From the NCBI GenBank assembly GCA_965202585.1, contig OZ241826.1, forward strand, positions 26,412,001-26,476,000: a stretch of DNA of 64,000 nt, in the 5' to 3' direction. This document shows, piece after piece, positions 22 to 25,900 of this stretch (its first letter is position 1; the number at the start of each line of letters is the position of its first letter). Source of the stretch: Thalia democratica (lineage: Eukaryota). The translations under genes and the position numbers were made by a program. The notes under the pieces were generated by a model, which saw only the letters and a list, made by a program, of their open reading frames with translations, searched no databases and was not told the DNA's origin.

Positions 22-3000
22 AAAATCGAGGGAGCGTTGGAGCAGTACAAGGTGGAGGTGAAGCTGATGACGGTGGAGCACAAGAAGAAGTCGCTGGAGG
101 TGGAGAGGGACTTGGAGAAGGAGAAGATGTTGAGGAGGCAGCTCGCGCAGAAGTGCTTGGAGCAGGGCGAGGCGTTCGAGGTGCAGCAGAAGCTCGTGGG
201 GAGTTTGCAGCAGCAGGTTGATAGAAGATATATTGAAATACATTTAATTAATAAATAAGACCGAAGCTTTTGAGGTGCAGCAAAAATTAGTTGGAAGTTT
301 GCAACAACAGGTTTTAAATGATTGAAAAGTAAACAAAATAAATATTTATGAACGAGGATTTTGATCAATTAATAAGTTTTAAATGTAGCAGTAACTTGTT
401 AGAAGTTTGCAACAGCAGGTAAATAAAAGTGATTAAAAAATGTGTTTAATTAAAATATAATGTGTATAATTATGAACAACAGGTTTGGTTTTATTCAATT
501 AAAACAATTCATTTTGGTTAAAGTTAATAACTTAAATTACAATAAATAAGAAATTGGCTTTTGAGGTTCACCAGAAATTAGTTGGAATTTTGCGACAGCA
601 GATTGTGATTAGTAGCTGTAAAGTAGGATAACAGTTTTTTGTAAATCTTAAAGACATTTAAAACGAATAAAACTTCTTTTAGATGTTTTAATTAATATAA
701 TGTTTATTAATACTACAGTTTGTTTAAAATAAGTATCTATTGAAGTATGTAGCGACATGTTTGAATAAAATTGTAAGGTTAAACAATGAAGCTAAAGCTA
801 CTCAAAATTTTGTATGATTTTTTCTTTTATTTTTAAAATTTTTTGGTAAAAGCAGGTTTTAAAAGATTACTTATTACATTCAATAGTTGAATGAAATCAT
901 AAAGTTTATTGCGTATAAATTATTTCTTTTAATTAAGTTATTTAAGTCAATTCTTAAACATTATGTTATTAATTGCGTTAGAATGTTTAATTAAAGATGA
1001 GAAACTTGTTTGCTATAAATGTAGATACTGATAATTCTGTCTGCGTCATTACTTGCTTTGTAAAAATAAATCTCTAATTTTCAAATGTCAAGTAAGTATT
1101 AAAGCTTGTTGTAAAATCTATAGGTCATGACCCTAGACTTTTATAAAATACATTTTGAAATGAAAAACTTTTATGTTCAAATAGCTTCAAGAAGTTTTGT
1201 AAATTGTCAATAAAGATAATAGGAGTGTTTAAATAATGATTAAACTAGATTAATATTACTTTTTGTAAACGTTTAAAAATTTAATTTTATTAATGTTTCT
1301 TTAAAAATTATCAATAAGCTTAATTATTTCAATGATTTAAAAATAATCGAAAGTCAGTTCAAATTTACAAGTTTGTAACTTTTTTTTCTATCTTTATTTA
1401 AGAATACAACCAGCCATACAACAATAGTTTTTCACTACATTATTACTATATTTTATCAATAATACATCAAACATCTTATAGATTTCTATTATTAGTAGAA
1501 CTTATCTACTAGAAGATAAAATATTATTATTTTTATGCACCATGCTTGGCAAAGATTTTCAACTAGCTATAACAAAAAATAGTTTTTTTATAATTAAAGT
1601 GACCTGTATAACATTAAAAACATATAATTATAATTTATGAAAAAATTCAAGTATGTAGCAAATTTCAATTTAATTTGAAATTTTTTCAAATAAGTATTAA
1701 TATTATGAACTTTAATGAATTAGTAAACCTAAATTAACTAACCACAAGTAAAATGTTACCGAAAGTCTAAATAAACTCTGACTTTAAAGACTTTCTTTAA
1801 CATAGCATACGAAATAACCAATGTTTAGTAAAAATAAGATTTAGATCACCACTTGTGTTTTAATTTATATTATTTTTTAAATTAATAAATATTTCAACAA
1901 AGTTACTTTTTCAGCAAGCTTTATACATTATTAAAATTGTTGGTGTAACAAATTTAACAAGATCAGATAAAACAATGTTTCTTTAATTACCAACACTTGA
2001 AAAAAACTACAGTATACTAAAATAATTTTATTAAAAATAAACCCTCTATATTACACAGATCAAATTTTACGAAAAGAAGTTCGGTGAGGTGCAAACGATG
2101 CTGACCAAATCTCACGATACTTGCACGTCATTGGCCGATCAGCACGACAAGATGAAGAAACGCTTGAGCGCCGTCCAATCAGAAAGAAGCAATCTGCAGC
2201 ACAAACTCGAAGTGAAATCTAAACTCGCCAATCAGGCTATTAAACAGGTTTGTGGTTTTCAAACTAAGTTATAATACAAATTTGTTTATATTTTTAAAAA
2301 CGTTAAGAAATTGTAAGTTAAAAAAGTTGGTTTGTTTCATTGTTAATTTTTTATACAAGTTTTAAAAATCGTTTAATTAATGTAAAAGTTCATCTTTCAA
2401 ACTTCTGCAAACCTATGATGTAAAAAATGAGCTTATAAAACATTTTACTTAAAATAAAAAAAAATAAAATATTATTTAGGCCTTCACTAGGTGATTTTAT
2501 AGTTTTATTGTACATATTTTGATCATATAAAGTAATTCAATATTTATACTTTTATTATTAACAGATGTGTCAACAATATTTTGTAAAATTTAAAACTAAT
2601 GATTTTTTATTGCTGTAGTAATGTTACAGTTTATTAATATTAAACAGCTAAAACGAAGGATTGTATTTCAATTACTCCATCAATAAAATTTAAACTTTAA
2701 AATAACTAGTACTTTTGTATTATTGTTATAGAAACACAGTACATAGTGTTTTAGATTACACATACCAACTAATTTTCCGAGAGATACACTTTCTTTGTTA
2801 TTTAATAATAAACTGGATTTAATAATTATCAAAATATTAGACAGTTTATCTTTTAGACAGTTAACTTGTATTAAAAACTGTCTAAATGTGCCTTTTTGTA
2901 TTTGACATTTTATTTATACCAATAGAATATTTCTAGCTAAGTTCTCTCGTTCATGAAGCAAGTTTAGAATTAAAAAAGTTAGAAATTGAAAATGTATTTG

Positions 3001-6000
3001 TTTTCAGGTTATCAAAAATGTGATTTAAGTTTTTTTTTGAAAAATTTTTTACTTCAAAGTTTAAGCTTATATTTTTTTATTTAACTTATTGTAAGTATCA
3101 ACATAACATGCTCTGTTTTTAAAGAGGTATATTTCTTGAAATTATATTTGTAGCTGTCATATTTACTTACTTTTTTCTTCTCTTTATTTCGATTCTCATC
3201 ACCTTTTTTGACAAACTTACAGATCTAAATTATGCTAGTACATAAATACAAACTTTTACATTTTAATTATTTATGGTTAATATTTTATCATTAGAAATAT
3301 ACAAATTACAGAATTGCTAAAAAACAGTAATCTTGGAAAAATCTGAAATCTGACTATTTGGTCTAAAAAAGCCTGTAAAAACCTGGAGTTTAAGAAACTT
3401 TGAAAAAAAAAACCTAAAGTTTTGAACAAAAATCACTAAAAATTCTGGTATTCTAAACAATTTTTACATTTTTAGTCGTGAAATTTCATTTTGAGATAAA
3501 ATCTATCATAAAGATTAAAAAAAGTTGTCAATATCAAATTTTTTTAACACGGATTTAAAGAAGCTTTAAAGTATATTTTAACTTTTAATATACTATTTAA
3601 AACAGTGTTTTACCTTTAACATAACTTTAAACAAAAAACCCAAAAATTTGTAATTTCGAAAACCTGAAAGAAGCTTTTTTAAATCCATAGGCAACACTTA
3701 GATTAATATTAGTTATATAAAAGGAAAACTAAACTATCGAATTGCATACTTACATACTATCCAAATAGTTTTTATCTACAACAATTAATCAAAGGGAGAA
3801 AAGACCAATTTAAAGTTATAATTCGACATATGGAAGTCATATGTGGTTAAAACTAGTAATCAGCATTGACTAGTTTTATTCTATTTATAAGCTAAAGGTA
3901 TTTCAAATAGTTTTGAAAAACAAAAAAAATAGAATGAAAATTATACATATGAACAGCTGTGTTTAGTTGTATTTTACTTCTAAGAGGTTTTTGGAATGGC
4001 TTGTATTGACTTGCAACTTCTCCAATAAGTTATTAGTAAAAATGACTAATGACAACTTGTCTATAAGCTTAAAAGTTCAAATAGCTCAATTTGTATAAAA
4101 TAACCTTGAGTCTAGTTTTGTTTACAAGCTTAAGAGTTTTTTAAAAGACTTTCAAACATTAGACTTGTTTTGACTTGTGCTTCTTCAAATAGTTATTACT
4201 AATAGCAAACTCGTTTAATACTTTAGATTAAATGAAACAACTTCGAAGCTTACTAAAAACTTGAGTGTAGTTTTAACTTTGATTATAGAATTTAGATAAT
4301 TTTTAAAGTGTTTTTATTGTTTGTAGTTAATTTTCTTTAGTAGTAATTACTAAAACAATTTAATCGAGAAAAGATCAACTTGAAATAATGATTCTCTAAA
4401 GTATTGAAATAAAGGTATAGTTATAAAGTATATAATTTTGACAAATTAAAATTTTACTCAAGGCTTGAAATTTTTAAATTTTTCTTTCAACTTACAACTT
4501 ATATTAGAACGAGAAAACGGCAACAAAACAAGGCAAATTGGAGAAATTGTGCAGAGCTTTACAGCAGGAAAGAAGTCAGCTTAACAAGCAACTTAGACTG
4601 TTGGAAAGTCAGCTGTCTAGCAACTGCTCCACTAGGACATCTAACGGTTAGATAGTTGTAAAAAGACTAATCATTTTTGAGCTGTAAAGCAATTTTAGAA
4701 AACCTTAAAGTATACTGTTCCTGCTTTTGGACATGGTTTAATTTAATTTGTTACCGAGCTTAAAAGTAAGCAAATAAATCTAATCTTGTGAATAAGTAAA
4801 ACATTATATGATGATATATTTATATTATTTGATATGTAGTAGTTTAAAGTTTGAAATGTAAAGAAACTATATTATAAATAAGCCGTTTAAAATTGTTATT
4901 AACTGTCTTTTACATTTGTTGAATTAAATTATGGTAAGACTATCTATTAAGGGTATAATGGGAAACCATCTTGTTTTATTTTTACAAGCTGGTTCTAATT
5001 TTAAGAGTAAATCTTAGCTTTTAGACATTTTTACCAATTAAAAAAATCAAAGTAACTTTTAACTTAAATGAAATTAAACTCGTTGAGTTCAATAGAAAAA
5101 TAGCGTTGTTAAAACACATATGTTATAGATAATTGTTCTAATTCAATTAATTTTTAATTTTTTTATAGTTGTATATGGGGTGAATGAAGTAGAAACTATT
5201 GTTATTGAAAGTAGTTTAGAATTAAATAATTTATAGTTAGACTTGTTGAAAATTAATTTTTGTCTCTTAAAATATTCTTAAAGTTTATAGGTTTTTTAAA
5301 TATTTTTTCTCGTTTATTATAAGTTAAACATCTTATTCAAAAACAAACGTGTCCAACAACCTATAATAAACAATGTTCCAATATACATATATATTATGTA
5401 TTTATTATACAAAAAACTACTAATTTTCGTATCGTTTACTAAGTTTTAACGTTAAGACGTATCTTTAGAATTAAATAAAGTACATAGCAAAAATTTTAAA
5501 GAATCACACATAAAAACACATTATGACGTTTCAAATAAAGTTGAATAATTTTAGTTAGCTTATCTTAAAAACAACTTATATATAAGTCAACTTAGTTTGT
5601 TCTTGTTTTTGGTTCTTGTTATAAATATATATATAATGTATATTTACAACAGAATCAACTGACAAAAGCAAAAAAGAAGTTTGCAACGAAAACTCTGAAG
5701 AGCTTGCAACAGTTGGAAATACAGATGACAAATCCGATAAAAACAATAGTGACGTCATATTAGAAGCTTGTGACAAAACAAACAAAGTCCAACCTGAGGA
5801 TGTCACAAAAAAAAGTTTAACTGAAGAAACAACGGCCGAGAAAGATGAAGCAGAATGTTCTAACGCTGTTCAAGTAGTGCCTGAAGCAGTTGCAGCGACC
5901 GAGGAAAACAAGGAACCTAATGATGCAGTACCCGAGAAGGAAAGCAAAGTTAATAGTGGAGCAGAAAAACCTTCTCTAAATGAAGCAGTTCCAACAGAAG

Positions 6001-6053
6001 CTAGTTCGGGTGCAGTTGAAAATTCCACTCACAAATACGAAGATTTGGATTGA
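22..6053 (+). CDS. TXLN: Taxilin-family coiled-coil protein, 3' part (4 coding exons; 5' exons lie upstream of the window)
   Basis: Exons 22-216, 2059-2247, 4508-4646 and 5653-6053 all have AG/GT ends with compatible phases (0,0,1) and end in TGA at 6051-6053. Spliced peptide ...QQQ|IKFYEKKFGEVQTMLTKSHDTCTSLADQHDKMKKRL...|NEKTATKQGKLEKLCRALQQERSQLNKQLRLLE matches the taxilin C-terminal signature (LY.EKF.EFQ..L.KS...KLEKLCRALQ.ER), followed by an acidic low-complexity tail. Paralog (A/B/G) not assignable. Confidence 0.88.
250..605 (+). repeat. Degenerate intronic tandem copies of the 3' end of taxilin exon 22-216, including its donor site
   Basis: 263-312 reads gaa gct ttt gag gtg cag caa aaa tta gtt gga agt ttg caa caa cag GT (EAFEVQQKLVGSLQQQ, same peptide as 169-216). 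Further copies at about 403-420, 474-484 and 557-604 (AFEVHQKLVGILRQQ). The copies at 260 and 551 are both preceded by aataaataaga. Confidence 0.9.
3309..3699. mobile_element. Non-autonomous hAT-like MITE (CAGGGTTGC-type TIR), degenerate copy
   Basis: Internal sequence aligns by eye with 7874-8163 and 32591-32880; ends cagaattgct...ggcaacactt; flanks aaatta/agatta. Confidence 0.55.
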
Positions 6054-7873
6054 GCTTTTGTATACATTGTCAGATATCTGTCTTGAAGAGCACTTTTTTA
6101 AGAAAATTTTACGAACATTTTCTTTAAACTTAACTTTATAATCAGTTTTTTTTATGTTTTGAAGCAGTTTTAGCATGATAGTATTTAATCCAACTTGTAT
6201 AACTATGCATAACAAGTTTCAAACTAACTCTTTATTCAAAATATATATTTATGATACATACGCTTTCAACGTTACTGTGTTTCGTGTTTATTTTGATACG
6301 CTTTTTATTTTCGGTGCTTTTTATTTATATTAATACCAGTTTGCCTTACATATCTCAATTATGCTTTGCTGCTTCGTTGTATTGGATGCCAATTGAGTTT
6401 AATTTATTATTTTATAAAACAAAGTAGTACTTTTTAAAGTTTTGTCATGAGAGATAAACTATTTAATTTTTATAAATTTTTTTTATAGATTAATTTTTAC
6501 TCCAGCTGAATCAATACTGTTTGAATTTTAAGTCAAAGTTTGTATTTTAGATGCCAAGTTTTTGAAATGTGCTTTTAACGATTTTAGATTTTAATGAACT
6601 GTATTTGTATTGTTTTGATAATGTGTTTAGATTAATAGTTATATATACATAAAAACTATAAAAAAAAGTTTTTTAAGTTTAATAAAACTAGAATGGTTGT
6701 TTGAAGGGCTGAAGTCTTGTATGAGAGGAAGAACACATTATAACAAATAATATCAAACTAAAGATTTTGATTTTTAAAATACAGAAATTTAGTTATTTAT
6801 ATATTTCACTACTTACTTGCTTCTTTGGCAGCATTAGGTTAATTGATAAATATATAAGTGTAAGTTAGTATAGAATTAACATATTATTTTTCAAACTAAT
6901 TGAAATTAAGCGTTTCATATTTAGTTAGGTTAATTACGACTACATATAAATTTTATTAATGTTTGTGTATTTCTAATTTTTATACTTGTGTACAATTAAT
7001 ACTTATATTGTTGTTGTCACACACTCAGGTTATATCAGTAACTCGAGATAATTAATGTTTGTAAATCTATTTTCAAACTTTGGCTAACTTAAGACAATTT
7101 TGTTTAAGGCTCAGGATGGTTTTAATATTTTTGAATATTCTCAGGAGATATTTTTACAGGTTTTGTTGGTTTATATCGAGCTTTGTCGAAGAACTTTATT
7201 TTTACTAATTTTTAAAAGATTTAAAAAAATTAATAACTTTTTGAAAATTTCAGACGGTATTTGGTCACTAAAGGCAGTTTTTTGACTCTTTTTAGTGAGT
7301 GACAACCTTTTATACGTATACACAACTTTAAGAAATTAAATGCTTTTACATCTTAGCTTATGCAATTTTTTTTTGGTTCTCTTCATAAAATTTGTATCTG
7401 ATTAGCAGAAAGTACTATAAAAAGCATTTTTTATTAAATAAATTTTCGTGACCTTCAGCTTTGAAAAACATTAAGTGTGCTCAGTTTCTAACATAAGCTC
7501 ATTAATATTTTCAGTAAATCAACGTTCTTAGCTTAAATAACTGAAAAGGTGTTTAAACTTATCGACTTTACATAACTAACTAACAAATGTACTTTATTTT
7601 TAGTTTTACACTAGTTTAGTTCATGACTAACAGTAACAAATTCTAAACAAATAATTCATTAAATGTTGAGAAACAATAAACTAATAGACAAAACTATCGA
7701 TGATCACTAGATCATGACCAATAATAAGCAGGCTTAAGTATATGGTTGAATTAAGAATAAATTCAAGATGAAGATTCAAATATTAAAATATATTTGTTAA
7801 AGAATTCACTGAGTTTTAGCGCAAACTGTAAAACGTAGTAACTGTTTGAATATTTCAATAAGCTAGCTTTACA

Positions 7874-8163
7874 CATGTTTGCCAAAATACCTGGAATTTA
7901 AGCTAAAAAATCTGGAGTTTTTAACATGCTAAGTAGTAAAATTTCAATTTGACGCCAAAAATTATCATAAACATAAAATGTTTTCAATCACCAAAAAAAA
8001 AATATTAAAAAACACTTTTAAAATAGCTTTGGAGTATTTTTTCAATGTTTTTATATTATAAAATATTTTTTTACCTAAAACTTAACTTATAACTTAAAAT
8101 AGACCAAACAATTTATACTTTTGAAACCTGGAGAAAACTTTTCGAAAACATTTGCAAACCCTG
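7874..8163. mobile_element. Non-autonomous hAT-like MITE, same family as 32591-32880
   Basis: Ends catgtttgcc...tgcaaaccctg; perfect 6-bp flanking duplication tttaca (7868-7873 and 8164-8169); shared internal blocks (taagtagtaaaattt, aaaatagacca). Confidence 0.65.
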
Positions 8164-9244
8164 TTTACAAGTAAAAATCTATAAAATGTTTGTTTGTACG
8201 AAACTGTTATATAAAGCAGTACTTTGACTGTTTTTTTAAGTGAGAGTAAACCTAATTTTGATTTTATAAGTTACTACTTACAAAAACGAGTATGTTATAA
8301 TAATTTTTTTTGTTTACGTTGTATTCATGCCTAGCACTGAGCACACAGGTTCGCACTTGGAGAATGACTGACCTGAGAATTTCTAGATTAGTGATCAAAG
8401 TTCAATTTTAAAGAACAACTTTTTATCGTTTGTAATTTAAGTTTTTATAGTTCTTAAAAAAGTCTTCAGGCTTTTTTCACTATAATACAAGTTATTTAGA
8501 CTTTTAGCTCATGTTAACATTCTAAAAAAAAATTAAATGAAAAGTAACTTTAGTGTTAAAGAGTTTATTTGTGAATAAAATTTTTATAAGACTTATAAAA
8601 ATCTTATAATTTTATACTTATATTACAAAATTTATAGTCTGCTACTATTTTTTTTACAAAAGTTTTCAATAAAAAGCTAATTCTACTCTACATTGATAAA
8701 AAAAAAACTTACTTGAAAAGGAGTTAGTGAAAACATTAACAATACTTCTTATTTAAACATGCTTAAGTTTTAAAACCGTAAAAAATAAGTCCCAATAAAA
8801 CTTAGTAATAAAACTACCTGTAAATGTTTAAGTATTTTATGTCCAGTAGCTAGGACATTTGTTGTTACGAATTTTGTTTTTTCAATACAAAAGAAGTTTT
8901 ATAATTTTCGTTTTGAACAAAGCAGACCCAAAAACTTAATAAAAGTTTTTACCGAAAAGCTTGAAGTACGAAGTATACTACACTAATAAATAGAAACATA
9001 AAAAAATACAACTTAAAAGTTCTAATTGTAACAACGTTAGAAACGGCTTTAAATTGTTTATTCATTTCTCTTTCTACTACTAAATTTTGATAGAAAATTT
9101 TGTTAGTTTTTTTTTATTAGCATATTTAAGTAATTATGCTTAGTACTATTTCAATCTTGACCAGTACTGATTTTTTTACTAAAAAGTTGCCCTACAAGCT
9201 CAAATTTTTAGTTAAATAAATTTTGCAATCAAAGAAAAGTCATT

Positions 9245-9345
9245 ATTTGGGCATTCAACTCGATGACCGAGAGGTCTTTTTGTGTACCCAGGTCCTTAAA
9301 CCGAAATTTATTGAGCATTTTTTCGTACTTTTCGTTTGTTAAATG
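9245..9345. repeat. Dispersed repeat fragment, inverted relative to 14815-14905
   Basis: Reverse complement (aaggacctgggtacacaaaaagacctctcggtcatcgagt) aligns with 14851-14890 (aaggacctagtacacgaaaaaaccttacgcttatcgagt). The 14.8-kb copy is absent from the paralogous position near 41110. Confidence 0.5.
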
Positions 9346-12300: not shown

Positions 12301-13031
12301 CATATTTTTATAAGTTTACTAACTTTTGTTATTTTGATATTTATTTTAACAGAAAGTAATTAAGGTTGAAACTGATATAAACCTGTTATTACCTAAAACT
12401 ATTAACTGCAAGGTAAAGTTTCAACAACACAAATGTTTTCGCAACCATGCATTTCAACTCGGTAAACGAAAATTTCATTGTTTTTTAACTAAAACAAACA
12501 AAAACAACTTAAAAATAGTCTTAAGAAGGCTTAAAACCAATAAAATGTTGCATTAAACAAACATTATGTGGTATTTCAACACACCATCAGTATAAGTATT
12601 CTTACACAAAAAACATCCTTGAACTACTTAAAAGTAAACATTGTTGCTTTGTCACCATTTCATAAAAACCATATGGCAATTTTCTTGGAGTTTCTGGTAA
12701 ACAAGAAAATTGTTTAAAAGCCATACCGTTTTGAGTTTTAGTACATAATTGAAAAGTTTCAGAACAAAATTAGTTTGAAAATTTAAAAATTTTGAATTAA
12801 ACGAAAAGTTGCAAAAAAATTAATCTAATATTTATGATAAAATAGTTAAACAAAACATTTTTTGTAAATAAGCTTTAAAACGTGGTTGTAATATTACAAA
12901 GTCTTAATGGTACCACATTTAAGTATAATATATCTATTTGCTTTGAGAAATAAAAGCATTTTAAAACAGAATCTTTAAATAAATAAAAATGAAATTGTCT
13001 ATTTTGTTGACACTCGCTTTTATCTGTTCAG

Positions 13032-14508
13032 TTTCTGCTGGACCACCACAATTTCCTAATGCAAGACGTAAGCTTTAAAATGTTTTGTTAAAAGTATAAA
13101 ACTATGTATTAGTTTGATAGAATGTACAGTAATAAGTCTTTAAATACTAAAAAAAAAAATTTGAACGAAATATAACGTGCTATGATTAAATTTAATTAGC
13201 ATACGACTAAAACTAATAACTAAAAAAAAACGAGTTATACTTTTTGAAATTAAAACTTAGAAATTATATTTTTAAGGATATAAGTTTATTAATACTTAGT
13301 CATATAATTTAAAATATTAGTCTAGTAAATAAATACCTTTGCGAACCAAAGCATAGATAGTACTTAGAATATAGTTGAGTAAACTGTTTTTAATATATAT
13401 TAAGTTACTATATAAAGTTAAAGTGACCATTTAAGTAAACATGTTTTCTTGTCTCTTAAGATCACTCAACGTCTTTGGTCGTCAGATTAACTTGTAATTA
13501 AAAATACATTCAAATAAATATAATAAGACATATATATTGTTAAATCTCTTCAGGATTGAAACAACTCAACATCCAAGATTGTCAGATCAACTTGTAAATA
13601 TACATATATACTTTATCAAAAACTATTTTATGTTATTTACTTTCTCTAGGTTTGAGATCACTCAACGTCCAGGGCCGCCAGATCAACTTGTACGCTGCAT
13701 GCTCCGGATACCACCTCCACGACAGCGGACGCGTCACCTCCCCAAACTACCCAAGTAACTATGACAACTACATGGACTGCAACTGGCTGGTCCACGCCGA
13801 GGACGGACACCCGGTCAGCATCGATTTGAACGTGGACGGTGTTGAGAGCAACGACTACCTTCAGGTTAGGGGATTTTATTTTGAATCTATTGGAAGCAGC
13901 TTTAATTTGTAATAATTTGTACACATCAAAACAAGATTTATTTGTTATATATATACATAATACATCAGCACCAGATTTATTACGTTTAAAGTGTAGCATT
14001 TACATTAGTTTTCTTTAACTAAGAAAAAACTTAATTGTAGTAACTCTTCCAAGCAGTATGTTTAATAAAGAGTGTTAAATATAGTTAGAAATGTGTAAAA
14101 CTTATTTAAGGAAAATGTTGTAAGATGTTAAATTTTAAAGTGATTGTTTCTGAAAAAGTTTGAAAATAATTTCAGGCTTAAAACAGCTTATATTAAACAA
14201 AAGTATTCTATGTTTAAATACAAACTCGTTAAAACTTTTAAGATAAAAAACGATAAACTAAAGACTTATTCTTTTTCGGAAAATTCTCCACAATTTTTCA
14301 ATACTTAAGTACTTTAGAAACTTAGTTAATTAATTAAACTTCTAAATAGGTGTACGACGGACAAACCGAATCGGACGCCCAACTGGCCAACATTTTCGAC
14401 AACTACAACCAGAGGTACCACATTGAAGCGACCGGTAACTGGATGTACATCGTGTTCAGATCTGACAGCGCCAACACCGCCAAGGGATTCTACTTCGATT
14501 ACCAATAA
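13032..14508 (+). CDS. CUB-domain protein, 3' part (small or secreted; 5' exons not identified)
   Basis: Exons 13032-13067 (36 nt, phase 1-1, donor gtaagc; less certain), 13650-13864 and 14350-14508 (TAA). Peptide ...CSGYHLHDSGRVTSPNYPSNYDNYMDCNWLVHAEDGHPVSIDLNVDGVESNDYLQ|VYDGQTESDAQLANIF...ATGNWMYIVFRSDSANTAKGFYFDYQ* has the CUB motifs C.G, SPNYP..Y, C.W.I, D.L.VYDG, M.I.F.SD, GF...Y. Confidence 0.88.
13441..13600 (+). repeat. Two degenerate intronic copies of the 5' end of CUB exon 13650-13864
   Basis: 13455-13497 (tta aga tca ctc aac gtc ttt ggt cgt cag att aac ttg taa) and 13551-13597 (cag|ga ttg aaa caa ctc aac atc caa gat tgt cag atc aac ttg taa) versus exon ttg aga tca ctc aac gtc cag ggc cgc cag atc aac ttg tac. 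Confidence 0.85.
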
Positions 14509-14527
14509 ATATACTTTGATGTTACTG

Positions 14528-14533
14528 AATAAA
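14528..14533 (+). promoter_or_regulatory. Probable polyadenylation signal of the CUB gene
   Basis: AATAAA 20 nt after the stop, retained in both duplicate copies (about 40812 and 44567). Confidence 0.5.
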
Positions 14534-15310: not shown

Positions 15311-18300
15311 TTTATTTTAACTAAAAAAACTCTTGAATAACAACTTTTTTTTTTGAATTTGATTTATAACTTTCAACTAAATAAACTGCTAACAAGAAAA
15401 GTATATTTGCTAATTCTACGACAAACCGATAAAAATATCTATTTTAGACCAAATGTTTTTCGTTTTAGATAGAAGGTATGTTTACGCTAAACTTTGACTT
15501 TGAATTTGCACACAATAATTAAATATTATGGCTATAAGCTATGAAATCTTTTTAGGTTTTATAAAGTCTTGACTAAAAAAAGATTTAACTCAAAACAAAA
15601 TTAAGTATTTTTTATTCATATTTTACACTATCAGTAAAGACTGTTTATTAATATATAAACTTTTTACATGTGTTTTTATAAAGTGCATTGTGTTAGCTTT
15701 AGTTAACATAAAACTTCCAATAGGAACAATCAGTTAATAAATTCCTAACTAGTTAAAAACGAACAAAAAAAATATTTATTCTTAACTTAATATTGTTTTG
15801 AAGGTATACAACAAGTTTTCAGGGGTAAAAAAAGTTTAATATTTTTTTCATCTCATAACTATTACTGATACTAACTACAAGCTGACTTTTGTTTATAGTT
15901 AAGTAAAGACATTTTCTTTAAAGTTTTATTGTTTAAAAGCTATATACTTATACACTGTGGTGCACAACTCGATAACCAAAAGGTTCCTTTGAACACCAAG
16001 TCTTTAGACAAAATTTTTTGAGCGCGTTTTTTATTGTTCAATAAACAATATGTAAAGTTTGAATAAAAGTTAATAATAACTTTAATTAATGCATATTTAG
16101 ACTAAAATATTGAAAAAAAAGGTAAGCCTTTGTGTTCGACAAAGATAAATTTTGAAGTGTAGTTTACAAAATGATAAAACATATTTCTTGTTAGAACTTA
16201 AGCACTACTTGGACTTTCTTTTCTAGTTATTTAAATATTAAACATAACTAACTTTGGTACATAAATTTATTATAAACTAATTTGACATAAATCGGACAAC
16301 CTATCTAATTTAATACCCACAAAATGTTAGTTTTAAATAATAGACATTTTTTTGTTTTCAAATGCAAGTTTTTGAAATACAGTAAATAAGCATTAATTTG
16401 TTGGGAGGTTTAAATTTTTAACAGTTTAAGCTTTAATCCATACATTGTGCTTTTACTTTGTAACTAATGTTCAGCAAAATCCACAAGTTCCGGTCCGGAC
16501 CAAGGTACTTTTTATTTATTTTAATTTATTTGTTTTAAACTTCACTTCAACTATACTCTTTTATTCGCTTTTGACCTTAGAAACTTTTCTGGTTGGCGGG
16601 CTATACATATAAATATTTTACTGCGTGAAGTAATAATTTTTGAAGACGACAGCAAAAAATTATCTATAAAGCAAAACTATTTTTAAATGTACTTCGAAGT
16701 AAAAACAACTTTGTACTGAAAATAAAGTTAATAGCATCTTTGAAAAGATATAAAAAACTCAATTTTAGTTGTTATGCACGAGTTATTTCTCAGTAAAAAA
16801 TTACGTTTCAAGCTAGATGCTTCTGTTGGGTAAGTCGGATTCGGTCCTCAGTCCATATGATGCTTATATCTTATGTATATATGATTTGTATCTAGCCTAT
16901 AGTTATGTTTAAGCTATAGAAATAATTGATTACCAGTCTGACGATTTTATTTTTAACAACTTTATCATAGAACAGAGATGGTCATACTTGCAGGACACGG
17001 CAAGCGACTAACTACTTGATAACAACAATTTGCACTAAGCAAGAAAATGTTTAAATAAAAGCTTATAACTATGGTATGAATTGATTTTATAGTTAACTAT
17101 GATACTAATTTATCATTTATACTTTAAATTATTTTTTTTTATTGAAATTATTTCTAAGTATAGTTTTACAAAGCTAAGCTTTATAGCTGTATATAGAAAG
17201 TTGTCACAGATGGCCTACTAAATAGAAAATTTGCTCAAACCCAGACATATAGACACAAAAAACCATAAAAAGATCAGTTGATTAAGGAACAAAAAATAAT
17301 TGAAAAATACTGTGAACTGAAAATACTGTGAAAAAAATATTTGTGTGTTATAAAAATAAAAATTACTATAAGTTACTTTAATTTTAGTTAACGAATTAAG
17401 TCCAAGCCGTCGGGTTTTTTTTTTGTAATTTTTTATATATAATAAGTATAGATTTGAAACAGTTGTACAACAATACTACAAAAATTAAAGTTTGTAAAAC
17501 TATCTTATAGAATTGATATAACAATGCTTCATTGTCAATTTATGTCTTTAAGGGATTTTTTCTTATATAATTAGTGTGATTTCATTTTAAGTATAGACGT
17601 TTTGATTTAATGAAAAGTTAGTATGTTTTTTTTAACTTATTGGATCAGTTAAATAACTACTAATAAAAAAAATATTTTTTACTGACCCTTCAAAGTTTTA
17701 TAGTAAAAAAAAACTTTTGTAACTAAAAATATTTTCAATCAAAGAGTAAACACATATATCTTGACACAAACTTTTAGTTGTTGCTGCTGTTTAAAACACA
17801 AAAACCCACATGTGCTATTTATTTAACATTTTAAAACAATTTTTAACTTTATCAATACTCAACAGTTTCAAATACATAAAATTTTTGTAAAAACATTCAA
17901 CAAAAAAGCAAACAATATTTTAATCAGTAACTGTTTTTTTTTTTTTGACTGTAACAATCAAAATGTTATGCAAGTTTTTAATTTTTGTTCTTTATTTGTA
18001 TTTAGAAACTGATTTGCTTACAGCATATATCAAATATTTAGTGTTAAGACTTTAAGGACTATCGATTGTAACACAACGACATAACTTTTCATCTGTATAA
18101 GCTAAAAGAATTTAAATATTTGAGCTTCATTTAGGGATAAGTTATTTAATAACAAAGAAAATTATACTTCAAATTGGTCAACATATCTATAATTACATAA
18201 GTTTGCTTGTTTAAATAAATTAAAATTGTAAGACTAAAAGCTAGGATACATTTACAAAGATGAATGTAAAAAGCTTTTCAAAAGTAACACTAAAAGTAAC

Positions 18301-19939
18301 TAAACACATAAAAATTAAGCAGTACCTTCTCGAATTTTGTTCGCAAATTATAAGTTTATATTTTAGAATAACTTTCACTAACGTTAAGTAAGTAGTCTGT
18401 ATAAAATTTCGACCTTAATTGATAACTTACAATCATAACTATCCAACAAATATTTGAAAGACTTGTAGTATTTAATTAGGCTTTTTGACATATATATTAT
18501 AAAGTTAAAATGTAGAACTTTTTTTCATTAATTATTGTTTTAAAATTTTTTATATATTCAACAAATAAAAGCTTACAGTAAGAGGCTTCCGTAATCATTT
18601 AACCATATAACATAAAATACTGTGATCTGTTGTCATTATTCTTGTCTAAATTGCCGCGAAACAAGTTTTAATGTTGTTTAAAATATATTTCATAAAGTTT
18701 AAATTTAATAAAAAAAGAGGTTAAAGTTTAAATACACATCTCTTAAAAAAATACGTCTTGTCTTACAATATTTTATTTTTGAATAGAACCATGACTATTT
18801 TCAACCACTTTTATAAGCATAATTCTTTAAAATATCAATGACAAAACTTACTAAAAAACACTTGTGTGATAGATAAGAATTATTGATAAACAATATTGTA
18901 TTTTGTTCTTAAAACTGGTAAAACCTTTGTACAGGAAAGTAAAAAAAAATATCTAAGTCCTTGTTTTTGTACTTTGAAGATAGCAATTTTTTGATTCCGG
19001 GACACAAATACTGTAGTATTATAAACTAATACTTGTTGATAACTTAATTAAAACCTGCAAAGTTAGATAAAAAACTGATTCCTATGAAATTTAATTACCA
19101 TATAAGACTTACTCCCTTTTAATTCATCTCAAGCTAAAGAACTTTACACTGTCTGAAGACAAACACAGTCTGTAAAACAAATTACTTTTATATACTGTTA
19201 AAGAATATTTTCTTCTTATAGAAAAAAACTTAAGTTATAATTCTCTTACTTAACAAAAATTTTACAAATAGATGCATAAACACAAAAGTATACATTATAC
19301 ATGAAACTGCTTAGACCATTATAAAATCAAGTATGAAAACAAAACTTGACTTAACATTTTTATTAAATGGTAAATCTTCATCTTCAAAAATAGTAGAAGT
19401 TGAAAACATATATAACAGGTAATTTTACACTTATCTTCGTTTAAAAATTCTAAATATATACTTAATTTTTGTAAACATATTAGTCGTAAAAGTACCAATT
19501 GTATTTACTTAACTTTAAATAAAAAACACATTAAGTAAATAATTATTTTTTATCATCAATAATAAAAACACAAATTTTCTAAGACAAAATAATGTTAAAA
19601 ACGTAGATAAACATTTAGAACCTATAAATATTAGCCTATTTAAGTTTTTAAAATCATTATATAAAATAATAAAAGTTCTAACATTATAAAAATACAAGAT
19701 TGTCTTAAAACATAAAAACAAAAAACTCCAGAAAAAAATTTATCAAAACAATTACTTTGTAGTATGTAGTATCTTTTTTAATAAGCAATTTATTATTTTT
19801 GCATGTAAAGTAAAGCTTTAAAAATGTTAAGAGTAAAAACTGTGAATCATAAAACACATTGGTTTGCTCATAGCAATTAAAACTAAATATCTTTTAAACT
19901 TGTTTTAAACAACTAAACTCCAATAGTACATACTTCAAA

Positions 19940-19945
19940 TTTATT
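19940..19945 (-). promoter_or_regulatory. Probable UTP14 polyadenylation signal
   Basis: AATAAA on the minus strand about 43 nt after the stop; conserved in copy B (48299-48304). Confidence 0.5.
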
Positions 19946-19987
19946 TTCCAATATCAAAAAAAGACAAATCTACTGTTTTCTTAGTTT

Positions 19988-22900
19988 TCACTTTCCGAGC
20001 TCTCCCACCCTCTTGTAATGCTTTTGCTTCTTGGTCATGCCAAACTGCAGTTTCTGCTGTCTCCTCCTTCTACTCTGACCAACGTCCACCTTCACTACAT
20101 CCGGGTGCATTGGACTGATGAACTTGCCTGTAAAAAGTTTGTTAATCTAATTTTCGTTGTCAGGGTCGTAGGTTCAACAAGCCTTCGTTTGCTTGTTTGT
20201 TGATAAACACTAATTTTTGCTTACATTTTGACAAGAGTGATTTTCGTTATCTAAAACCAACTTGAATGTGTTTAAATCGTAAGCAAAATTTTTATGTTTG
20301 AAACCAGCAGCAATCTACGTCCCTAGTTGACACTGAATCGCAATGAATGTACTCGACACTAGATCTTTTTTCAAGATTATTTACTAAACAACAAACACAA
20401 CATGCACACCTGAAACAGTCTCGATCTTGGGCCGGTTGATCTTCTTGAGCGAGAGAGCCGTGTTGTACTGCTTCGCCACGGGGTAGTCCAGTGACCTCTC
20501 GAAGGCTGGGACGTCTCTGTGGTACTCCCACGGTATCTGCTGCACCTGTTTGCGCGTTGGTTTGTTCACGTTTGTTTGTTATGAAAAAAGTTGTTGTTAG
20601 AATAATGACAATAAGTTTTATGAGTAGTTTTGATGGGTAGGTTTATATTGCAAATATTAATAGTTACTTTATTAAATATATAATATTATTTTGAAAAAAT
20701 TAAAAAATAATAAGCTTAAAACAAATTTAATTAAAAAAAAATTAAGCTTCAAACAAAATTAATATAGAAAAAAAAGTTTTGATGTGCACTTCTAAACAAC
20801 TTCTCAATGAGAAACAAATAGTTTTACTCCAGTCATATACATTAAGAACTCAATAAAAACCTGCATCTTGGTCAAACCGAGATCTCTGTGCTTGGTCGGG
20901 ATCCACGCAAAACTCTTCCTCTCTTTCTCCACATCCCTCATCTTCCTCTTCTACAACATGAAACAACATTTGAAAACTTAATTTCAAACAAAAACTTCAA
21001 TTGTGTTTCGTTCTGCCATTCATGCAATGCAAACTTTACTTTTTTACACTTGAATACTTTATTTGACAAAAGCTTCGAAAATAATTAAATTTTCTCAAAA
21101 CAATCGTCGTAATAAAAAAAATCTTACAACATAATAAGAAAATTATTAAAATAATTATATCTAATCAATTTCCAACCAAACAACCTTGGCCTTTTTCTTC
21201 TTCTGGGTGATTCCTTCCCCCGCCCACCCGGTACCGAACCCCGGCATGTCCAGCTCCATCATCTCCTTCTCCCTCTTCCGCTCCTCCTCCTTCTCGTGCT
21301 CCCCCCACACGTCGTCCTCCTCGAACGCCTCCTCGATCAACCCCGCGTTCTTGTCTGGATTTGACAGTTTGATCATCATATATATAAATATGAGATTTTA
21401 CCATAAAATATGGTAAATTGGGGGCAAAAATCAAGGAAAGGTTTTCAGAAAAAGTCATTCTGAACTACAGTTGAGTAATTATTTTAGTTATTTTTAAATT
21501 TATGGTATTTAAACATTGTAAAGACTATAATGGGTAGATTAATTTCAAAGAGACAGCTAAGATATTTAATATGAAAATCACTCACCCGGAACGAAATCGT
21601 TCATGAGATCGTCCACTTCGCTCTGAACTTCCTTCCCTCCTCCCACGACGATCAGCTCCTCTTCACCGTCGCGCAACCTCACCGGTTTCAACACTTCCTC
21701 CTGCTGAGTCACTTGTTACAAAAACCGACAAGTCGCTGAATTGAGCGGTAAATTATCACGTTTGTTACTATGTGTTTTGATTTTTAGAGAACAAATAAAG
21801 ATATCTCAAATTTTTAAAAAGAAATTATATTTTTATTATTTTGCACAATAAAGTCTTGCAAGAAAAATATACATTTTTATAATGGAACACGTCGAAAATC
21901 CACCCAATAAAAATTCCACTCGGTCAAATTCGAGAACCGTTTTGCGACCGAGGGTTAGGGGTAACAGTGATAGTGAAAAATAAATAAATTCAAAAATTAT
22001 ATAAAACAAAATAATAAATAGATAAAACACAAAAAAATTGGGTGCATTTTGAACGTTAGAACATTTCGAAAGTACACCGTCATTACAACAAACCTTCCTT
22101 TGCACTGCCACCATCTTCGTTTCCCCCTCCCCGTCCAAACCGGCCTCCTCCGTCTCAACTTGCACCATCACCGTGTTCTCTTCCTTCTCTTCGGCTTCCT
22201 GCTCCTCCCTTGCCGCCTTCACCACCTCCTCTGCTGCTTGCAACGATTTCAGTGATTGCAACGCGCTGGTGAACTTTTGCTCGTTCCTGGCCGCTTCGTC
22301 GTCCTGAGCATGATTGTCTGCTTCTTCTTGACCTTTTTGGTTTTAATGAAAGATTTGAACTTGATTTGTGTATTTCATTGTTTACAAATTATAAAAACTT
22401 GGACATAGCCTTTAAATTTAACTTTAATCTGTTTAAAATTAGCCGTTTCAGATGTAAAATGACTGATTCTTAAAAAACTATAACTAAAAGTGGCTGTAAA
22501 GTTTTATTTTTAAAGTTAAATTGCAGATAATTTTTTAAACTTTCCAATTAATTGTTCTTACTAATCAAACAAACAAGAACAAATACAAACCTTCAGTCTC
22601 TTCACTGTCGTCTTGTTCAGCTGCCAGCCACTTGTTGTCTGATTTCAAAGGTTTTACTACCTCTTGTTGAACATCGTTACTTTCTCCTTCATCATCATCA
22701 TCTACTTCGGATTCACTGCTGTCACTTTCAACCTGATGAATAACTTCAAGTAAACTTTCTCAACTCCATTGAATTAAGAACCTTTACGTTATTTCTTAAA
22801 CTTCAACAAACACTCCATAATCATTTAGAACGAGCCATAAATCAATTGATACGATAAACACCAAACAAATCAAACACATTTTATATTTATCATTTTATTT

Positions 22901-25900
22901 AAGAAATTATAAGTACATTTTTTATTGTAACACACCTTTCTCTTCTTCATCAATTCCTTGTGCCGATCAGCTTCGGCATTCATCTTTTCCCTGACGTCCT
23001 CATTGTATTTGGCAATCTTCGCCTTGAATTTTGAATTTTGTTAGAAATTTTATGCATAAACCATTTTAAATTTTGAAGTAATTATTTAGTTTGTTACTTT
23101 ACTTCTATTTAGAATAAAGTTTCTAACCACTAACATCGTTGTATTTATTTAAAATTACATTGCAATATTCACCTTATTCTTATGCCATATTCCCGTCATG
23201 ATAAAATTGCTAATGACTAACATAAGAATAGAATAACTTAATTACACCTAAATAAATTACAACCCTAACCTTGTTCTTGTGCCATTTTCCCTGCCCCCGA
23301 TGAGCCAACGTAGCCCTCTCTTTGGCTCTCGCTCTCATGTGTTCCTCTTCCTCGTCTTCCTGATCTTCCTCGTCGCTCCCTTGCAGCTCCTTCAGCTTCT
23401 GCTGCTCCTGTTGGTTTTTTTTTCAGAATCACTAAATTTTATAGCTTAGTGCAGTATGTGTATTTATGTATAACTAGCTTGAAGCTTCATCAATTTCTTA
23501 TGATTTTTTTTAAATGTTGGATCTTTACAATTTACTATCATTTTTTTAAATTACCATTAAAATTATTAAATCTGTAGTAATTACTTTAAATAAATTGTAT
23601 TTTTAAAATTATGTTTGCTCGGATATCTTTAATAAAACAATGGTTTTTTGTTCATAAAAATTTAAAACTTAATAACAGAATAAACAACTTTATTTTTCAA
23701 AATTTCGTTATAAAAAAATATTTTTCGACCATTAAACAACAAAATGACCTTTATATTGTTCCAATCAATCATTATAAAAAAGTTAAACTTGTTTATGAAA
23801 TTATATATTCGAACCTTCTCTTTCTTCTTCCTCTGCACCCTCCTGAAGTTCTTGCTCTTGATCTTCTTGGTCCTCTTGTACATCTGCTGCATCCTTCCCA
23901 TGAAGACCCTGTTCTTCTGCAGCTGCTTCAGCCTCTCTCTCGCTTCCTGCTCGGACATCCTCTCTAGCGCCTCCTTGTCCCTCAGTGTCAGTCCCCGCCA
24001 CCTTTAATTAGTTTAAAGTTGTCCGGTTTAAATAGATAACGAACATAAGATAGGTAAACATTGTTTTACATAAAAAACTATTAAAAAAAGGACTTAAAAT
24101 AAAATAAATTAAAAATTTGAATAGCCATGCACCTTGCTACCCATAACATACCTGTGTAGTTATTACAATAAATAATAAACCAAAATGCGCTACATACCTG
24201 CCATGGTCGATTTCCTTGTCTTTCGGACCGTAAGTTGCCATCAGTTGGGCTTCCAAATCGCAAACGGGCTTCCTGGCTGTTGTGACTGTGTATTGGAGTA
24301 AAAGTTATTAGACAACCAAGAAATACATACGTACAAGATAAGCTTTTGAGAAGTTGAAATTAGAGTTTTTTTTTTTTGAAATTCTAACAATTTTAGTTAC
24401 TGATAATATAGGTTCACATGATAAAGATATACTAAAATAAAAAAGTTTAAAATCAAAGTGCTATAGTTCGATTTTAAGCATATTGAATGACCAAATCTCA
24501 AAAAAATCATTGAAAATACCTTACTCTATTGCCTGCAAAGTTATTTGTGGAAAAAAACTGTTTAAACTACAAAAACCAGCATTAATTCAAGTTCCATAAA
24601 CTTATAAGACTCCCTAAAACCAAAACATTAAAAATAAAAATTCCATACGACTAAAACCCCACCTCTCGAGTTTGCCCCCATCTTTCCCAGGTAGTTGCTC
24701 CTTAGCGGCTTCTGTTTTGGCGGGAACATTATGTGGTCTTCCCGCCACATCAGCTGGGCGTGATCGTCCCACTTGGAAGCTTCCTTGTTGTTTTTGATGG
24801 CGAGCGCCTTCATCTGCATGCGCTTCGACTCCGGCTTGCTCGGTTCGGCCTGCAACGTTTTCTTGTTCTTTTCAAGCATCTCCATCTTTCTCTTCATTTG
24901 GTCGCCTGAAAATAAGAAAGTTAATTCTAAACTCAAGGTTTTTTATTTGTTAAAGGATGAAAAATTATATTCATCAAATTTTAAAAAGTAAATAGTAACT
25001 GAATTTCTTTAATATATTCGACTAAAACACTTAACACTGTTTTTGTTATTCATATAAGAGAATAACTTTTTAACTGAAACTTCTTTAACTTAATTACTTT
25101 ACAACTTTAAATGATTAAACTTTTGTAATTAATAGTGTTCTTAGATTAGGTTTTGTGTTTAGTCTAATTTACACTTATTTATCATTTACAGTCAAAAACT
25201 TGCTATATAAAAAAGCAATAAGATTAATTAAACAAACTAATCGAATTATTTTCTAAAATAGAAGAAAACATAGCTTAGTTAAAGTTTAGTTCTGAAAAGT
25301 TAGTATCGTTTAACAAACTATAAAATAATATTTGTTTTAACGTTCTTGAACTATGATAAACAAGTTTAAGGGCATAGGGTAGTGTCTGACGATTATTTTT
25401 ACTAAAAATAACATTAAATCTTATATGAAAGCCACATATGAAAGTACGTACTACAAGCCAGTTTTTATAGAATTAAAAAATCATATTTAACTTTTGATAT
25501 ATTGTAATCTTTGTATAAAGCTTCTGATAATATGTTTAGACCGCAATTTTTTGTATTCAATATTCTCAGAAATTTGAAAAACCACTAAAAATCTATCTTC
25601 TTCTTTATTTTTTGAGCTAGAGACATCAGACTTTCAGGAAACGATCATTTTATAGTTTAAAAGGCTTTAAATGTTGCAACTTTCAAAATATGAAAAAATA
25701 TAATTTTTAGAATAAAAAAAAAAATAAAAAAGTTTTTTTTTTTATGAAAATTTTATTTTTCAAAAAGCGGTTTTAGTTTGTGCTTTCCATCAGAAACTTA
25801 TTAACATCACCGACTTTGATTGCTTTTATATCAAAAATTACTTTGAGTTTATTAAAGCGATTAAAAATGACTGATAGCGCAGATAAAACTGTATAAAATA

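What the first reader, a model, noticed from the sequence alone, without database searches (positions are those of the whole stretch)
166..23290. Exon-edge echoes recur in all three genes with a near-constant 94-100 nt spacing
Offsets from exon edge to echo: taxilin 94 (216>310); CUB 96 and a further 100 (13554 vs 13650; 13461 vs 13561); UTP14 97 (23270>23173). Each echo includes the splice site and stops 8-17 codons into the exon. Three unrelated genes sharing geometry and direction of codon change suggest a systematic process, such as short tandem duplications anchored at splice junctions that leave decoy or spare splice sites, coupled to exon-restricted GC3 recoding. This is the best candidate for an undescribed genome-wide phenomenon, but n=3 and the mechanism is inference.
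Basis: inference. Interest (0 to 1): 0.78.

Follow-up and report, generated by a model that had tools for sequence, protein, structure and literature searches.

The report
Decaying splice-junction copies in introns
Four exon borders in three genes of this very AT-rich tunicate genome carry old, decaying head-to-tail copies of themselves about 95 bases into the neighbouring intron; this repeat type is already known from lancelet genes as "mirages", but the regular unit length and the partly silent-only differences are not yet explained.

Summary
Direct copies of exon end plus splice site lie at the stated offsets: taxilin donor 94, CUB acceptor 96 and a further 100, UTP14 donor 97. A blind scan of 32 junctions found exactly these three, plus a weak fourth (UTP14 acceptor, 98, or 89 counted from the junction).

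They are true tandem duplications, direct only and always on the intron side of the copied junction. The taxilin array has at least five units. The UTP14 donor copy predates the 28-kb segmental duplication, and copy B lacks one 87-89-nt unit.

Strong copies are 30-60 times commoner at junctions than in intron tiles (p about 5e-4 to 1e-3). The clustering of offsets is unlikely by chance (p about 1e-4 to 1e-3).

Of 70 differences, 60 are G/C in the exon against A/T in the copy. Most copies fit AT-biased decay, but taxilin e1 (10 silent, 0 replacement) and CUB e2 do not.

The copies cannot serve as "spare" sites, because using any of them adds an in-frame stop. No RNA was available.

The structure matches the "mirage" minisatellites of amphioxus, so it is not undescribed. 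Other agents of this scan reported the same thing at many loci of this genome.

The parts
164..219 (+). Source copy: last ~53 nt of taxilin exon (ends at 216) plus donor GT
   Evidence: The exon has GC3 0.98. The neighbouring exons match Pfam Taxilin.
258..313 (+). Taxilin echo e1 (offset 94)
   Evidence: 77% identity. Ten silent and no replacement codon changes. Donor score 7.2 bits against 8.9 for the real site. Bounded by AG at 258-259 and GT at 311-312, with a 51-nt open frame.
337..420 (+). Taxilin echo e2, whose two halves lie in registers 17 nt apart, consistent with an insertion of about 17-20 nt; contains stop codons
   Evidence: Its 5' half matches e1 at offset 91. Its 3' half matches at offset 108 and matches the exon at 202.
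472..486 (+). Taxilin echo e2b, a truncated remnant with a strong donor-like site
   Evidence: Read. Donor score 13.9 bits. Aligned.
541..604 (+). Taxilin echo e3, a copy of e1 including its upstream flank; the GT is lost
   Evidence: 81% identical to e1 at spacing 291. Seven silent and three replacement changes.
843..868 (+). Possible taxilin echo e4 (weak); shares e1's downstream flank
   Evidence: family D11: 81% over 26 nt. Its donor 11-mer is identical to e1's.
13456..13496 (+). CUB echo e2 (far copy): acceptor AG plus about 13 codons
   Evidence: Offset 196 to the exon, 83% identity, 47 bits. Four silent and one replacement change.
13533..13596 (+). CUB echo e1 (near copy): pyrimidine tract, AG and about 14 codons, ending in TAA
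   Evidence: Offset 96, 73% identity. One silent and five replacement changes; 9 of its 10 differences are exon G/C against copy A/T. Acceptor score 6.8 bits against 5.3 for the real site.
13629..13692 (+). Source copy: intron tail plus first 43 nt of CUB exon 2 (starts at 13650)
   Evidence: Pfam CUB, E=3e-9.
23250..23291 (-). Source copy: last ~22-33 nt of UTP14 exon d (23270-23407) plus donor
23153..23194 (-). UTP14 exon-d donor echo (offset 97)
   Evidence: 30.6 bits, p at the floor of the test. Donor score 7.8 bits. Holds 5 of the 14 A/B differences of this intron within 27 nt.
23114..23136 (-). Second copy of the intron half of the UTP14 unit (spacing 87)
   Evidence: family D14: 83%.. 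Shows that the whole unit was duplicated, not only the exon-like part.
23473..23505 (-). Weak echo of the start of UTP14 exon d (offset 98, or 89 counted from the junction)
   Evidence: 18.5 bits, p=0.02. It lies inside the segment that copy B lacks.
23417..23503 (-). One repeat unit (87-89 nt) present in UTP14 copy A and absent from copy B, abutting the acceptor
   Evidence: No other copy in the window, so no sign of a transposon.
51273..51295 (-). The same donor echo in UTP14 copy B (offset 96)
   Evidence: 25.3 bits. Shows that the duplication is older than the segmental duplication.

Best explanation
These are mirage-type splice-junction repeats. Small head-to-tail duplications, with units of 87-100 nt, each took in 27-53 nt of exon plus 41-70 nt of intron. 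They arose long ago at four junctions: the taxilin donor, the CUB acceptor, the UTP14 exon-d donor and, weakly, the UTP14 exon-d acceptor.

Arrays then grew by further duplication or unequal exchange. Taxilin now has at least five units over about 650 nt, and CUB has two extra units. Arrays can also shrink: UTP14 copy B lacks exactly one unit.

The genuine site remains the copy attached to the GC-rich exon. The other copies are passengers that drift towards intron composition (22-25% GC). The exon is held by selection and keeps G/C-rich third positions, so a comparison of exon and copy looks like "GC3 recoding".

Shown here: the duplications, their geometry and orientation, their age relative to the segmental duplication, the direction of the differences, and the in-frame stops.

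Inferred: how the duplications arise (slippage or unequal sister exchange), that the copies are not spliced, and why the unit is about 95 nt.
For: - Direct repeats at the stated places.
- Whole-unit homology, including the intron half, in CUB and UTP14.
- Only direct copies, and only on the intron side of the copied junction.
- The echo is present in both UTP14 paralogues. The paralogues differ by one unit at the acceptor.
- 60 of 70 differences are exon G/C against copy A/T.
- CUB e1, taxilin e2 and both UTP14 echoes have silent-to-replacement ratios as expected for random AT-biased decay.
- Echo-lineage changes that can be polarised between copies A and B include a replacement change and a 1-nt deletion.
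- Every copy would introduce a stop if used.
- Short-read contigs from genomic runs reproduce the taxilin ladder (144-1050) without a single difference.
- The same architecture is published for amphioxus genes. There the repeats were reported not to disturb regular splicing or generate aberrant mRNAs, although alternative use of the repeated AG/GT signals was not excluded, and haplotypes differ in unit number (PMC3087553, PMC3902484).
- In human F7, downstream identical donor sites stay silent because the most upstream one is chosen (PMC1557585).
Against: - Plain decay does not explain taxilin e1: 10 silent and 0 replacement codon changes (P<5e-5), with 10 of 15 third-position G/C sites changed against 1 of 16 at first and second positions. 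CUB e2 (4 silent, 1 replacement; P=0.01) is also unexplained.
- The first offsets (94, 96, 97, 98) are far tighter than a generic duplication process predicts. With exons masked, the introns show no matching peak at this lag.
- In taxilin, the intron halves of the units are no longer demonstrably similar.
- No RNA data were available, so the silence of the copies is not shown for these loci.
Confidence: 0.65

Rival explanations
1. The duplication process itself is aimed at splice junctions and has a preferred unit of about 95 nt. It could be set, for example, by the sharp GC/AT step or by exon-positioned chromatin. The copies then act as fossils that record a recent, exon-limited shift of third codon positions from A/T to G/C.
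For: - Junction excess with odds ratio 30-61.
- Offsets 94/96/97/98, p about 1e-5 to 9e-4.
- The junction sits at 34-56% of the unit in all four loci.
- GC falls from 0.50 to 0.22 within 30 nt of every junction.
- GC3 varies from 0.23 to 0.98 between exons of one gene.
- Silent-only differences in taxilin e1. In CUB, both echoes carry T at two third positions where the exon has C.
Against: - There are only four loci, chosen after the fact.
- Notes from other loci of this genome mention other unit lengths.
- The silent-to-replacement ratio does not scale with echo age: CUB e1 has more replacement changes but fewer silent changes than the farther e2.
- Between paralogues, exon divergence (1-8%) is not above intron divergence (5-21%), so a generally fast silent turnover in exons is not seen.
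- A simple mutation-selection calculation (my inference) predicts that a copy old enough to witness 10 silent exon changes should have lost G/C at first and second positions too.
Confidence: 0.2
2. The copies are kept by selection as working RNA elements: decoy splice sites, extra U1 snRNP landing sites that suppress premature polyadenylation in AATAAA-rich introns, or poison micro-exons that tune expression.
For: - Eight of nine copies keep GT or AG.
- Donor copies score 6-14 bits, at or above the 95th percentile of intronic GTs. The CUB e1 acceptor scores above its parent.
- AATAAA-type motifs sit directly upstream of taxilin e1 and e3.
- The CUB copies are bounded by AG and a GTAA-type donor.
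Against: - Retention of the dinucleotides is not significantly above what 75-80% identity predicts.
- Taxilin e3 has lost its GT.
- The UTP14 echo core is the fastest-changing part of its intron between paralogues (5/27 against 9/221).
- One paralogue has lost a whole unit without loss of the gene structure.
- No RNA evidence here.
Confidence: 0.1
3. Taxilin e1 is, or recently was, a real alternative coding cassette: a partial tandem exon duplication that adds 17 residues to the coiled coil. That would explain why it changes only silently.
For: - AG at 258-259 and GT at 311-312 bound a 51-nt open frame in phase with the preceding exon. It encodes 16 of 17 residues identical to the exon end.
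- 10 silent and 0 replacement changes.
- The two changes specific to e1 relative to e3 and the exon are both silent.
Against: - It would need a 43-nt intron, whereas the shortest intron seen in the window is 196 nt.
- CUB e2 shows the same silent bias but would be read in a different frame and runs into TAA.
- Earlier notes of this scan report silent-only copies that cannot be in frame.
- No RNA available.
Confidence: 0.05

Closest known systems
"Mirage" minisatellites of amphioxus (Adh3, TnC, globins BflGb6/9, PGBD5)
   Same: Head-to-tail repeats whose unit spans an exon-intron boundary and carries the AG or GT. They occur on both donor and acceptor sides. The genuine site is the one attached to the exon. 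Unit number differs between haplotypes or copies. Units are of the same order of length (10-160 bp; 60 and 108 bp in PGBD5) (PMC3087553, PMC3902484).
   Different: Here the copies are old and decayed (64-83% identity, against 81-100% in BflGb6). The host is a tunicate. Four loci share an 87-100-nt unit. Some copies differ from the exon only silently. Splicing behaviour was not tested here.
Human F7 intron 7 37-bp VNTR
   Same: The first repeat spans the exon 7 / intron 7 boundary, so the real donor is followed by identical pseudo-donors that stay silent (PMC1557585). This gives a tested mechanism, choice of the most upstream donor, for why donor-side copies are harmless.
   Different: It has a shorter unit with near-identical repeats and is a single locus. 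It does not cover acceptor-side copies.
Intron gain by tandem duplication of an AGGT-containing exon segment (Rogers model)
   Same: A small tandem duplication creates a second set of splice signals. The globin paper proposes mirages as a route to new introns.
   Different: In that model the new intron equals the duplicated unit and lies inside a former exon. Here the copies lie in pre-existing introns of 247-1842 nt, and no new intron is created.
Tandem exon duplication with alternative or mutually exclusive splicing
   Same: A local duplicate of coding sequence with splice signals. Taxilin e1 is in frame and open.
   Different: Only the exon edge is copied, not a whole exon. The other copies carry stops or frame shifts.

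Membership tests
Mirage (splice-junction minisatellite) | Head-to-tail (direct, adjacent) repeat units | tested here: met
   Direct repeat families with spacings of 94, 96, 100 and 97 nt. Unit alignments. No inverted copies.
Mirage (splice-junction minisatellite) | The unit spans an exon-intron boundary and includes the splice signal | tested here: met
   All copies align across the junction. GT or AG is kept in eight of nine copies.
Mirage (splice-junction minisatellite) | Only the exon-attached copy is used in mRNA; the extra copies are silent | not testable with these tools
   No RNA run holds the stretch. The sequence shows only that use of a copy would add an in-frame stop.
Mirage (splice-junction minisatellite) | Unit-number instability between alleles or copies | tested here: inconclusive
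   UTP14 copy B lacks one 87-89-nt unit at the acceptor. The sequenced individual shows no length variant in the taxilin ladder.
Intron gain by tandem duplication (Rogers) | The new intron equals the duplicated unit and interrupts a former exon | tested here: not met
   The host introns are 247-1842 nt long, and the copies lie inside them next to conventional junctions.
Tandem exon duplication / cassette exon | The copy has both splice sites and an open frame in phase with its neighbours | tested here: inconclusive
   Met on paper by taxilin e1 (and by e3, apart from its lost GT). Not met by taxilin e2, by either CUB copy or by either UTP14 copy, which have stops or frame shifts. Inclusion in mRNA is untested.
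Transposon insertion with target-site duplication | The spacer is a repeated element found elsewhere, flanked by a short duplication | tested here: not met
   The A-specific unit has no other copy in the 64-kb window. The spacers of the three loci are unrelated by eye. The duplicated part is 40-56 nt, far beyond usual target-site duplications.

The most novel reading that the evidence does not exclude
In this pelagic tunicate a mutational process centred on exon-intron junctions makes tandem duplications with a preferred unit of about 95 nt. The stranded copies preserve older codons, and so expose a recent, strictly exon-limited conversion of third positions from A/T to G/C. If so, introns partly grow from recopied exon edges, and the copies give a built-in outgroup for dating exon recoding.
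Probability: 0.2. Interest if true: 0.8.

Novelty: new member of a known kind. Interest (0 to 1): 0.45.

Why it matters
Mirages have been described only anecdotally, in a handful of lancelet genes, and their origin is unknown.

This window shows them in a second chordate subphylum, in three unrelated genes. It adds three quantitative features that a plain "random small duplication" model does not predict: a strong excess at junctions, a narrow unit length, and some copies that differ from the live exon only silently.

If these features hold genome-wide, the copies would be useful in three ways:
- as natural decoy-site experiments for splice-site choice;
- as a source of intron growth;
- as dated fossils of exon codon usage, in a genome where exons (GC3 up to 0.98) and introns (22% GC) have diverged extremely in composition.

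If they do not hold, these loci are ordinary decaying repeats.

Tried and rejected
- **Chance or compositional artefact:** rejected. Tested with block shuffles, a junction scan against 300 random intron targets per query, and inverted and wrong-side controls.
- **Assembly artefact:** rejected for taxilin. Independent short-read contigs cover 144-1050 with no differences, though they may come from the same individual.
- **Spare or backup splice sites:** rejected, because of in-frame stops.
- **Transposon with target duplication:** no support.
- **General ~95-nt periodicity of intron DNA:** with exons masked, lags 80-119 are not enriched beyond the roughly two-fold excess seen at all lags. Power is low.
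- **Exon silent sites evolving much faster than introns, which would make the copies simple fossils:** not seen between the UTP14 paralogues, where exons differ by 1-8% and introns by 5-21%.
- **Continual gene conversion between exon and copy as the cause of silent-only differences:** rejected by argument, not by test. A conversion rate low enough to let third positions drift to A/T is too low to protect first and second positions.
- **RNA evidence:** none available. The only runs are genomic.
- **Looking up an exon-spanning ORF in public assemblies** to find other individuals: nothing on record.
- **The original Adh3 mirage paper (PMC117041):** not held.
- the spliced gene models were searched exon by exon by reference, and the joined proteins were not searched. 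The 100 N in the window were left untouched.
Full report
**Setting.** The window is very AT-rich: about 22-25% GC outside exons. It holds three genes:
- the 3' part of a taxilin gene on the plus strand (exons ending at 216, then 2059-2247, 4508-4646 and 5653-6053);
- a small secreted CUB-domain gene on the plus strand (12989-13067, 13650-13864, 14350-14508);
- a UTP14 gene on the minus strand (12 exons, 19988-24905).

Pfam, searched exon by exon by reference, gives Taxilin, CUB and Utp14. The joined proteins were not searched.

A second UTP14 copy (B, about 47.8-53 kb) and a partial third copy (62.2-64 kb) come from segmental duplication, with mosaic identity of 84-98.6%. Notes by other agents of this scan call the organism a pelagic, highly polymorphic tunicate. 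I did not verify that.

**The observation.** Identities are 73-83% over 41-64 nt.

I then scanned all 32 internal junctions blind. Each query (50 nt of exon edge plus the splice site) was aligned to its own intron and to 300 random non-adjacent intron pieces.
- Exactly these three junctions stand out, at 53, 45 and 31 bits against null 99th percentiles of 17-20 bits.
- The next best hit is the acceptor of the same UTP14 exon (18.5 bits, p=0.02). Its offset is 98, which falls in the same narrow range.
- Inverted copies do not occur (maximum 19 bits). Wrong-side copies are absent apart from one borderline 23-bit hit.

**Tandem duplication.**
- In CUB, the pyrimidine tract and part of the spacer are repeated as well as the exon start.
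- In UTP14, a 23-nt block of the intron half recurs at spacing 87 (family D14).
- In taxilin, the intron halves are no longer significantly alike. However, the echoes share flanks with each other: e1 and e3 upstream, e1 and e4 downstream. The ladder therefore grew partly by recopying echoes.
- The taxilin ladder has exon-like ends at 310, 418, 482, 601 and 855. The two halves of e2 match e1 at offsets 91 and 108, consistent with an insertion of about 17-20 nt.

**Age and turnover.** The UTP14 donor echo is present in both paralogues, so it predates the segmental duplication. Copy B lacks 87-89 nt of copy A (23417-23503). This segment abuts the acceptor and contains the weak acceptor echo. It has no other copy in the window. 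The echo in it is only about 64% like the exon, so I read this as loss of one old unit in B rather than a recent gain in A. The sequenced individual shows no length variant in the taxilin ladder.

**Junction bias.** The same alignment procedure was applied to 591 non-overlapping 60-nt intron and intergenic tiles. One tile reached 30 bits or more and two reached 25 bits or more, against 3 of 32 junction queries. That gives odds ratios of 61 and 30, with p=4.8e-4 and 1.2e-3.

A copy whose partner is frozen by selection stays recognisable longer than a purely intronic pair. My rough estimate is that this accounts for a factor of 2-3, not 30. The enrichment therefore looks real, but it rests on three loci.

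**The unit length.** For the three strong loci, a range as narrow as 94-97 has probability 1.5e-4 under a uniform null (30-400 nt) and 8.9e-4 under a log-uniform null. Adding the fourth locus gives 1e-5 to 4e-4.
- The exon share of the unit is 34-56% in all four loci, so the junction sits near the middle of the unit.
- With exons masked, intron-intron repeats show a general two-fold excess over shuffles at all lags and no special peak at 80-119. Power is low.
- Other agents' notes mention a 95-base duplication at another gene, but also other unit lengths. I therefore regard the regularity as real in this window and unproven for the genome.
- Nothing in the sequence tells me what sets the length. 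Chromatin on GC-rich exons, Okazaki-fragment or flap processing, and staggered nicks are guesses.

**Direction of change.** Across the seven echo-exon comparisons, 60 of 70 differences have G/C in the exon and A/T in the copy. Only 3 go the other way. Exons have GC3 of 0.23-0.98, while intron GC drops to 0.22 within 11-30 nt of every junction. A copy stranded in an intron is therefore expected to lose G/C.

I simulated AT-biased random decay of the exon sequence.
- CUB e1 (1 silent, 5 replacement), taxilin e2 (3, 3) and the UTP14 donor (2, 3) and acceptor (4, 6) echoes look neutral.
- Taxilin e1 (10, 0; P<5e-5), its derivative e3 (7, 3; P=0.005) and CUB e2 (4, 1; P=0.01) have too few replacement changes.
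- In taxilin e1, 10 of 15 third-position G/C sites changed, against 1 of 16 at first and second positions.

**What could explain the silent excess.**
- *Silent A/T-to-G/C changes on the exon lineage (copies as fossils).* This fits the two third positions where both CUB copies have T and the exon has C. It also fits the extreme GC3 (0.98) of this one taxilin exon against 0.59, 0.50 and 0.26 in the next three. But the UTP14 paralogues do not show exons diverging faster than introns. A copy that old should also have lost G/C at other codon positions.
- *Gene conversion with the exon.* This cannot both protect first and second positions and let third positions drift (my argument, not tested).
- *A coding role.* This is possible on paper for taxilin e1, which has an AG, an in-phase 51-nt open frame and a GT. 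It is not possible for CUB e2.

I leave this point open. The alternative haplotype carries two silent G/C-to-A/T variants in the taxilin exon end (174 and 177, the latter equal to the echo state). That is expected under either reading.

**Function.** The copies cannot be spare sites. Using the taxilin, CUB or UTP14 copies would bring TAA 256-258, TAA 13595-13597 or a TAG into frame.

They remain plausible decoys. Donor copies score 6-14 bits on a matrix built from the window's 16 real donors, which is at or above the 95th percentile of intronic GTs. The CUB e1 acceptor scores above its parent. No RNA run holds the stretch, so their use is untested.

Between paralogues, the UTP14 echo core changes faster than the rest of its intron: 5/27 against 9/221, p=0.011. 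That speaks against conservation.

[quoted passage not shown] They were later found in TnC, two globin genes (units 150-160 bp, 3 against 6 units on the two haplotypes) and PGBD5 (60 and 108 bp). In those genes the repeats were reported not to interfere with regular splicing or generate aberrant mRNAs, although alternative use of the repeated AG/GT signals was not excluded, and their origin was called unclear (PMC3087553, PMC3902484). Human F7 intron 7 is a further case, and it shows experimentally that the most upstream of identical donors is chosen (PMC1557585).

The loci here meet the structural criteria. Silence of the copies and allelic instability could not be established. Full-text searches found no description in tunicates and no genome-wide study.

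**Verdict.** However, the phenomenon is a known kind. "Spare sites" is wrong, and "GC3 recoding" is at most part of the story. The same phenomenon was reported by this scan at many other loci of this genome. What this window adds is the narrow unit length, a unit lost between paralogues, and a clean example of a silent-only copy.

Noticed in passing
window 14350-14508 vs 44389-44547: The last coding exon of the CUB gene is 158/159 identical to an orphan copy 30 kb away. The upstream intron is only 73% identical and the 3' flank 46-63%. The sharp edges fall at the acceptor and at the stop codon. This points to exon-limited homogenisation or very strong constraint on silent sites.
   Followed up: partly
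window 19443-34059 vs 47798-62073; 62174-64000: Identity between the two UTP14 copies is mosaic: 84-85% over the 3' exons, 92% in the middle, and 98.6% over the 5' exons and 10 kb upstream. A third partial copy is 98.6% like B and 95% like A. Either there were several duplication ages, or part of the region underwent gene conversion.
   Followed up: partly
window, all exons: GC3 differs hugely between exons of one gene (taxilin 0.98, 0.59, 0.50 and 0.26 from 5' to 3'; CUB 0.23, 0.79 and 0.74). Intron GC is flat at 0.22-0.25 and drops within 11-30 nt of each junction.
   Followed up: partly
window 23173-23199: The core of the UTP14 donor echo holds 5 of the 14 A/B differences of its 248-nt intron (Fisher p=0.011). 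At most of these sites one paralogue still has the exon state.
   Followed up: partly
window 3200-3800 and 5400-5600: Contig word depth reaches 1e4-1e5 in the genomic runs, so these intron stretches are very high-copy repeats.
   Followed up: no
window 21857-22062: An insertion of 173 nt (in three adjacent blocks spanning about 200 nt) present only in UTP14 copy A, with a GC-rich, partly palindromic core (21884-21983). It is probably a small transposon.
   Followed up: no
window 31724-31871 (and 59738-59885): A two-copy 79-nt tandem repeat at 75% identity, away from any recognised exon. It is the only strong purely non-coding short tandem duplication in the window.
   Followed up: no
window 4007-4029 vs 4614-4636: A borderline (23-25 bit) intronic copy of an internal part of taxilin exon 3, 607 nt upstream. 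It may be a very old echo or chance.
   Followed up: no
window 3861-3891 vs 3954-3984: A weak 93-nt-spaced direct repeat inside taxilin intron 2. Both copies end in AG followed by GT, so it could be the remnant of an old ladder.
   Followed up: no
window 174, 177 and 2051-2205: The second haplotype differs at silent G/C-A/T sites in the taxilin exons (2 in the last 73 nt of the first exon, about 6 in the second). The 840-nt ladder region has none.
   Followed up: no
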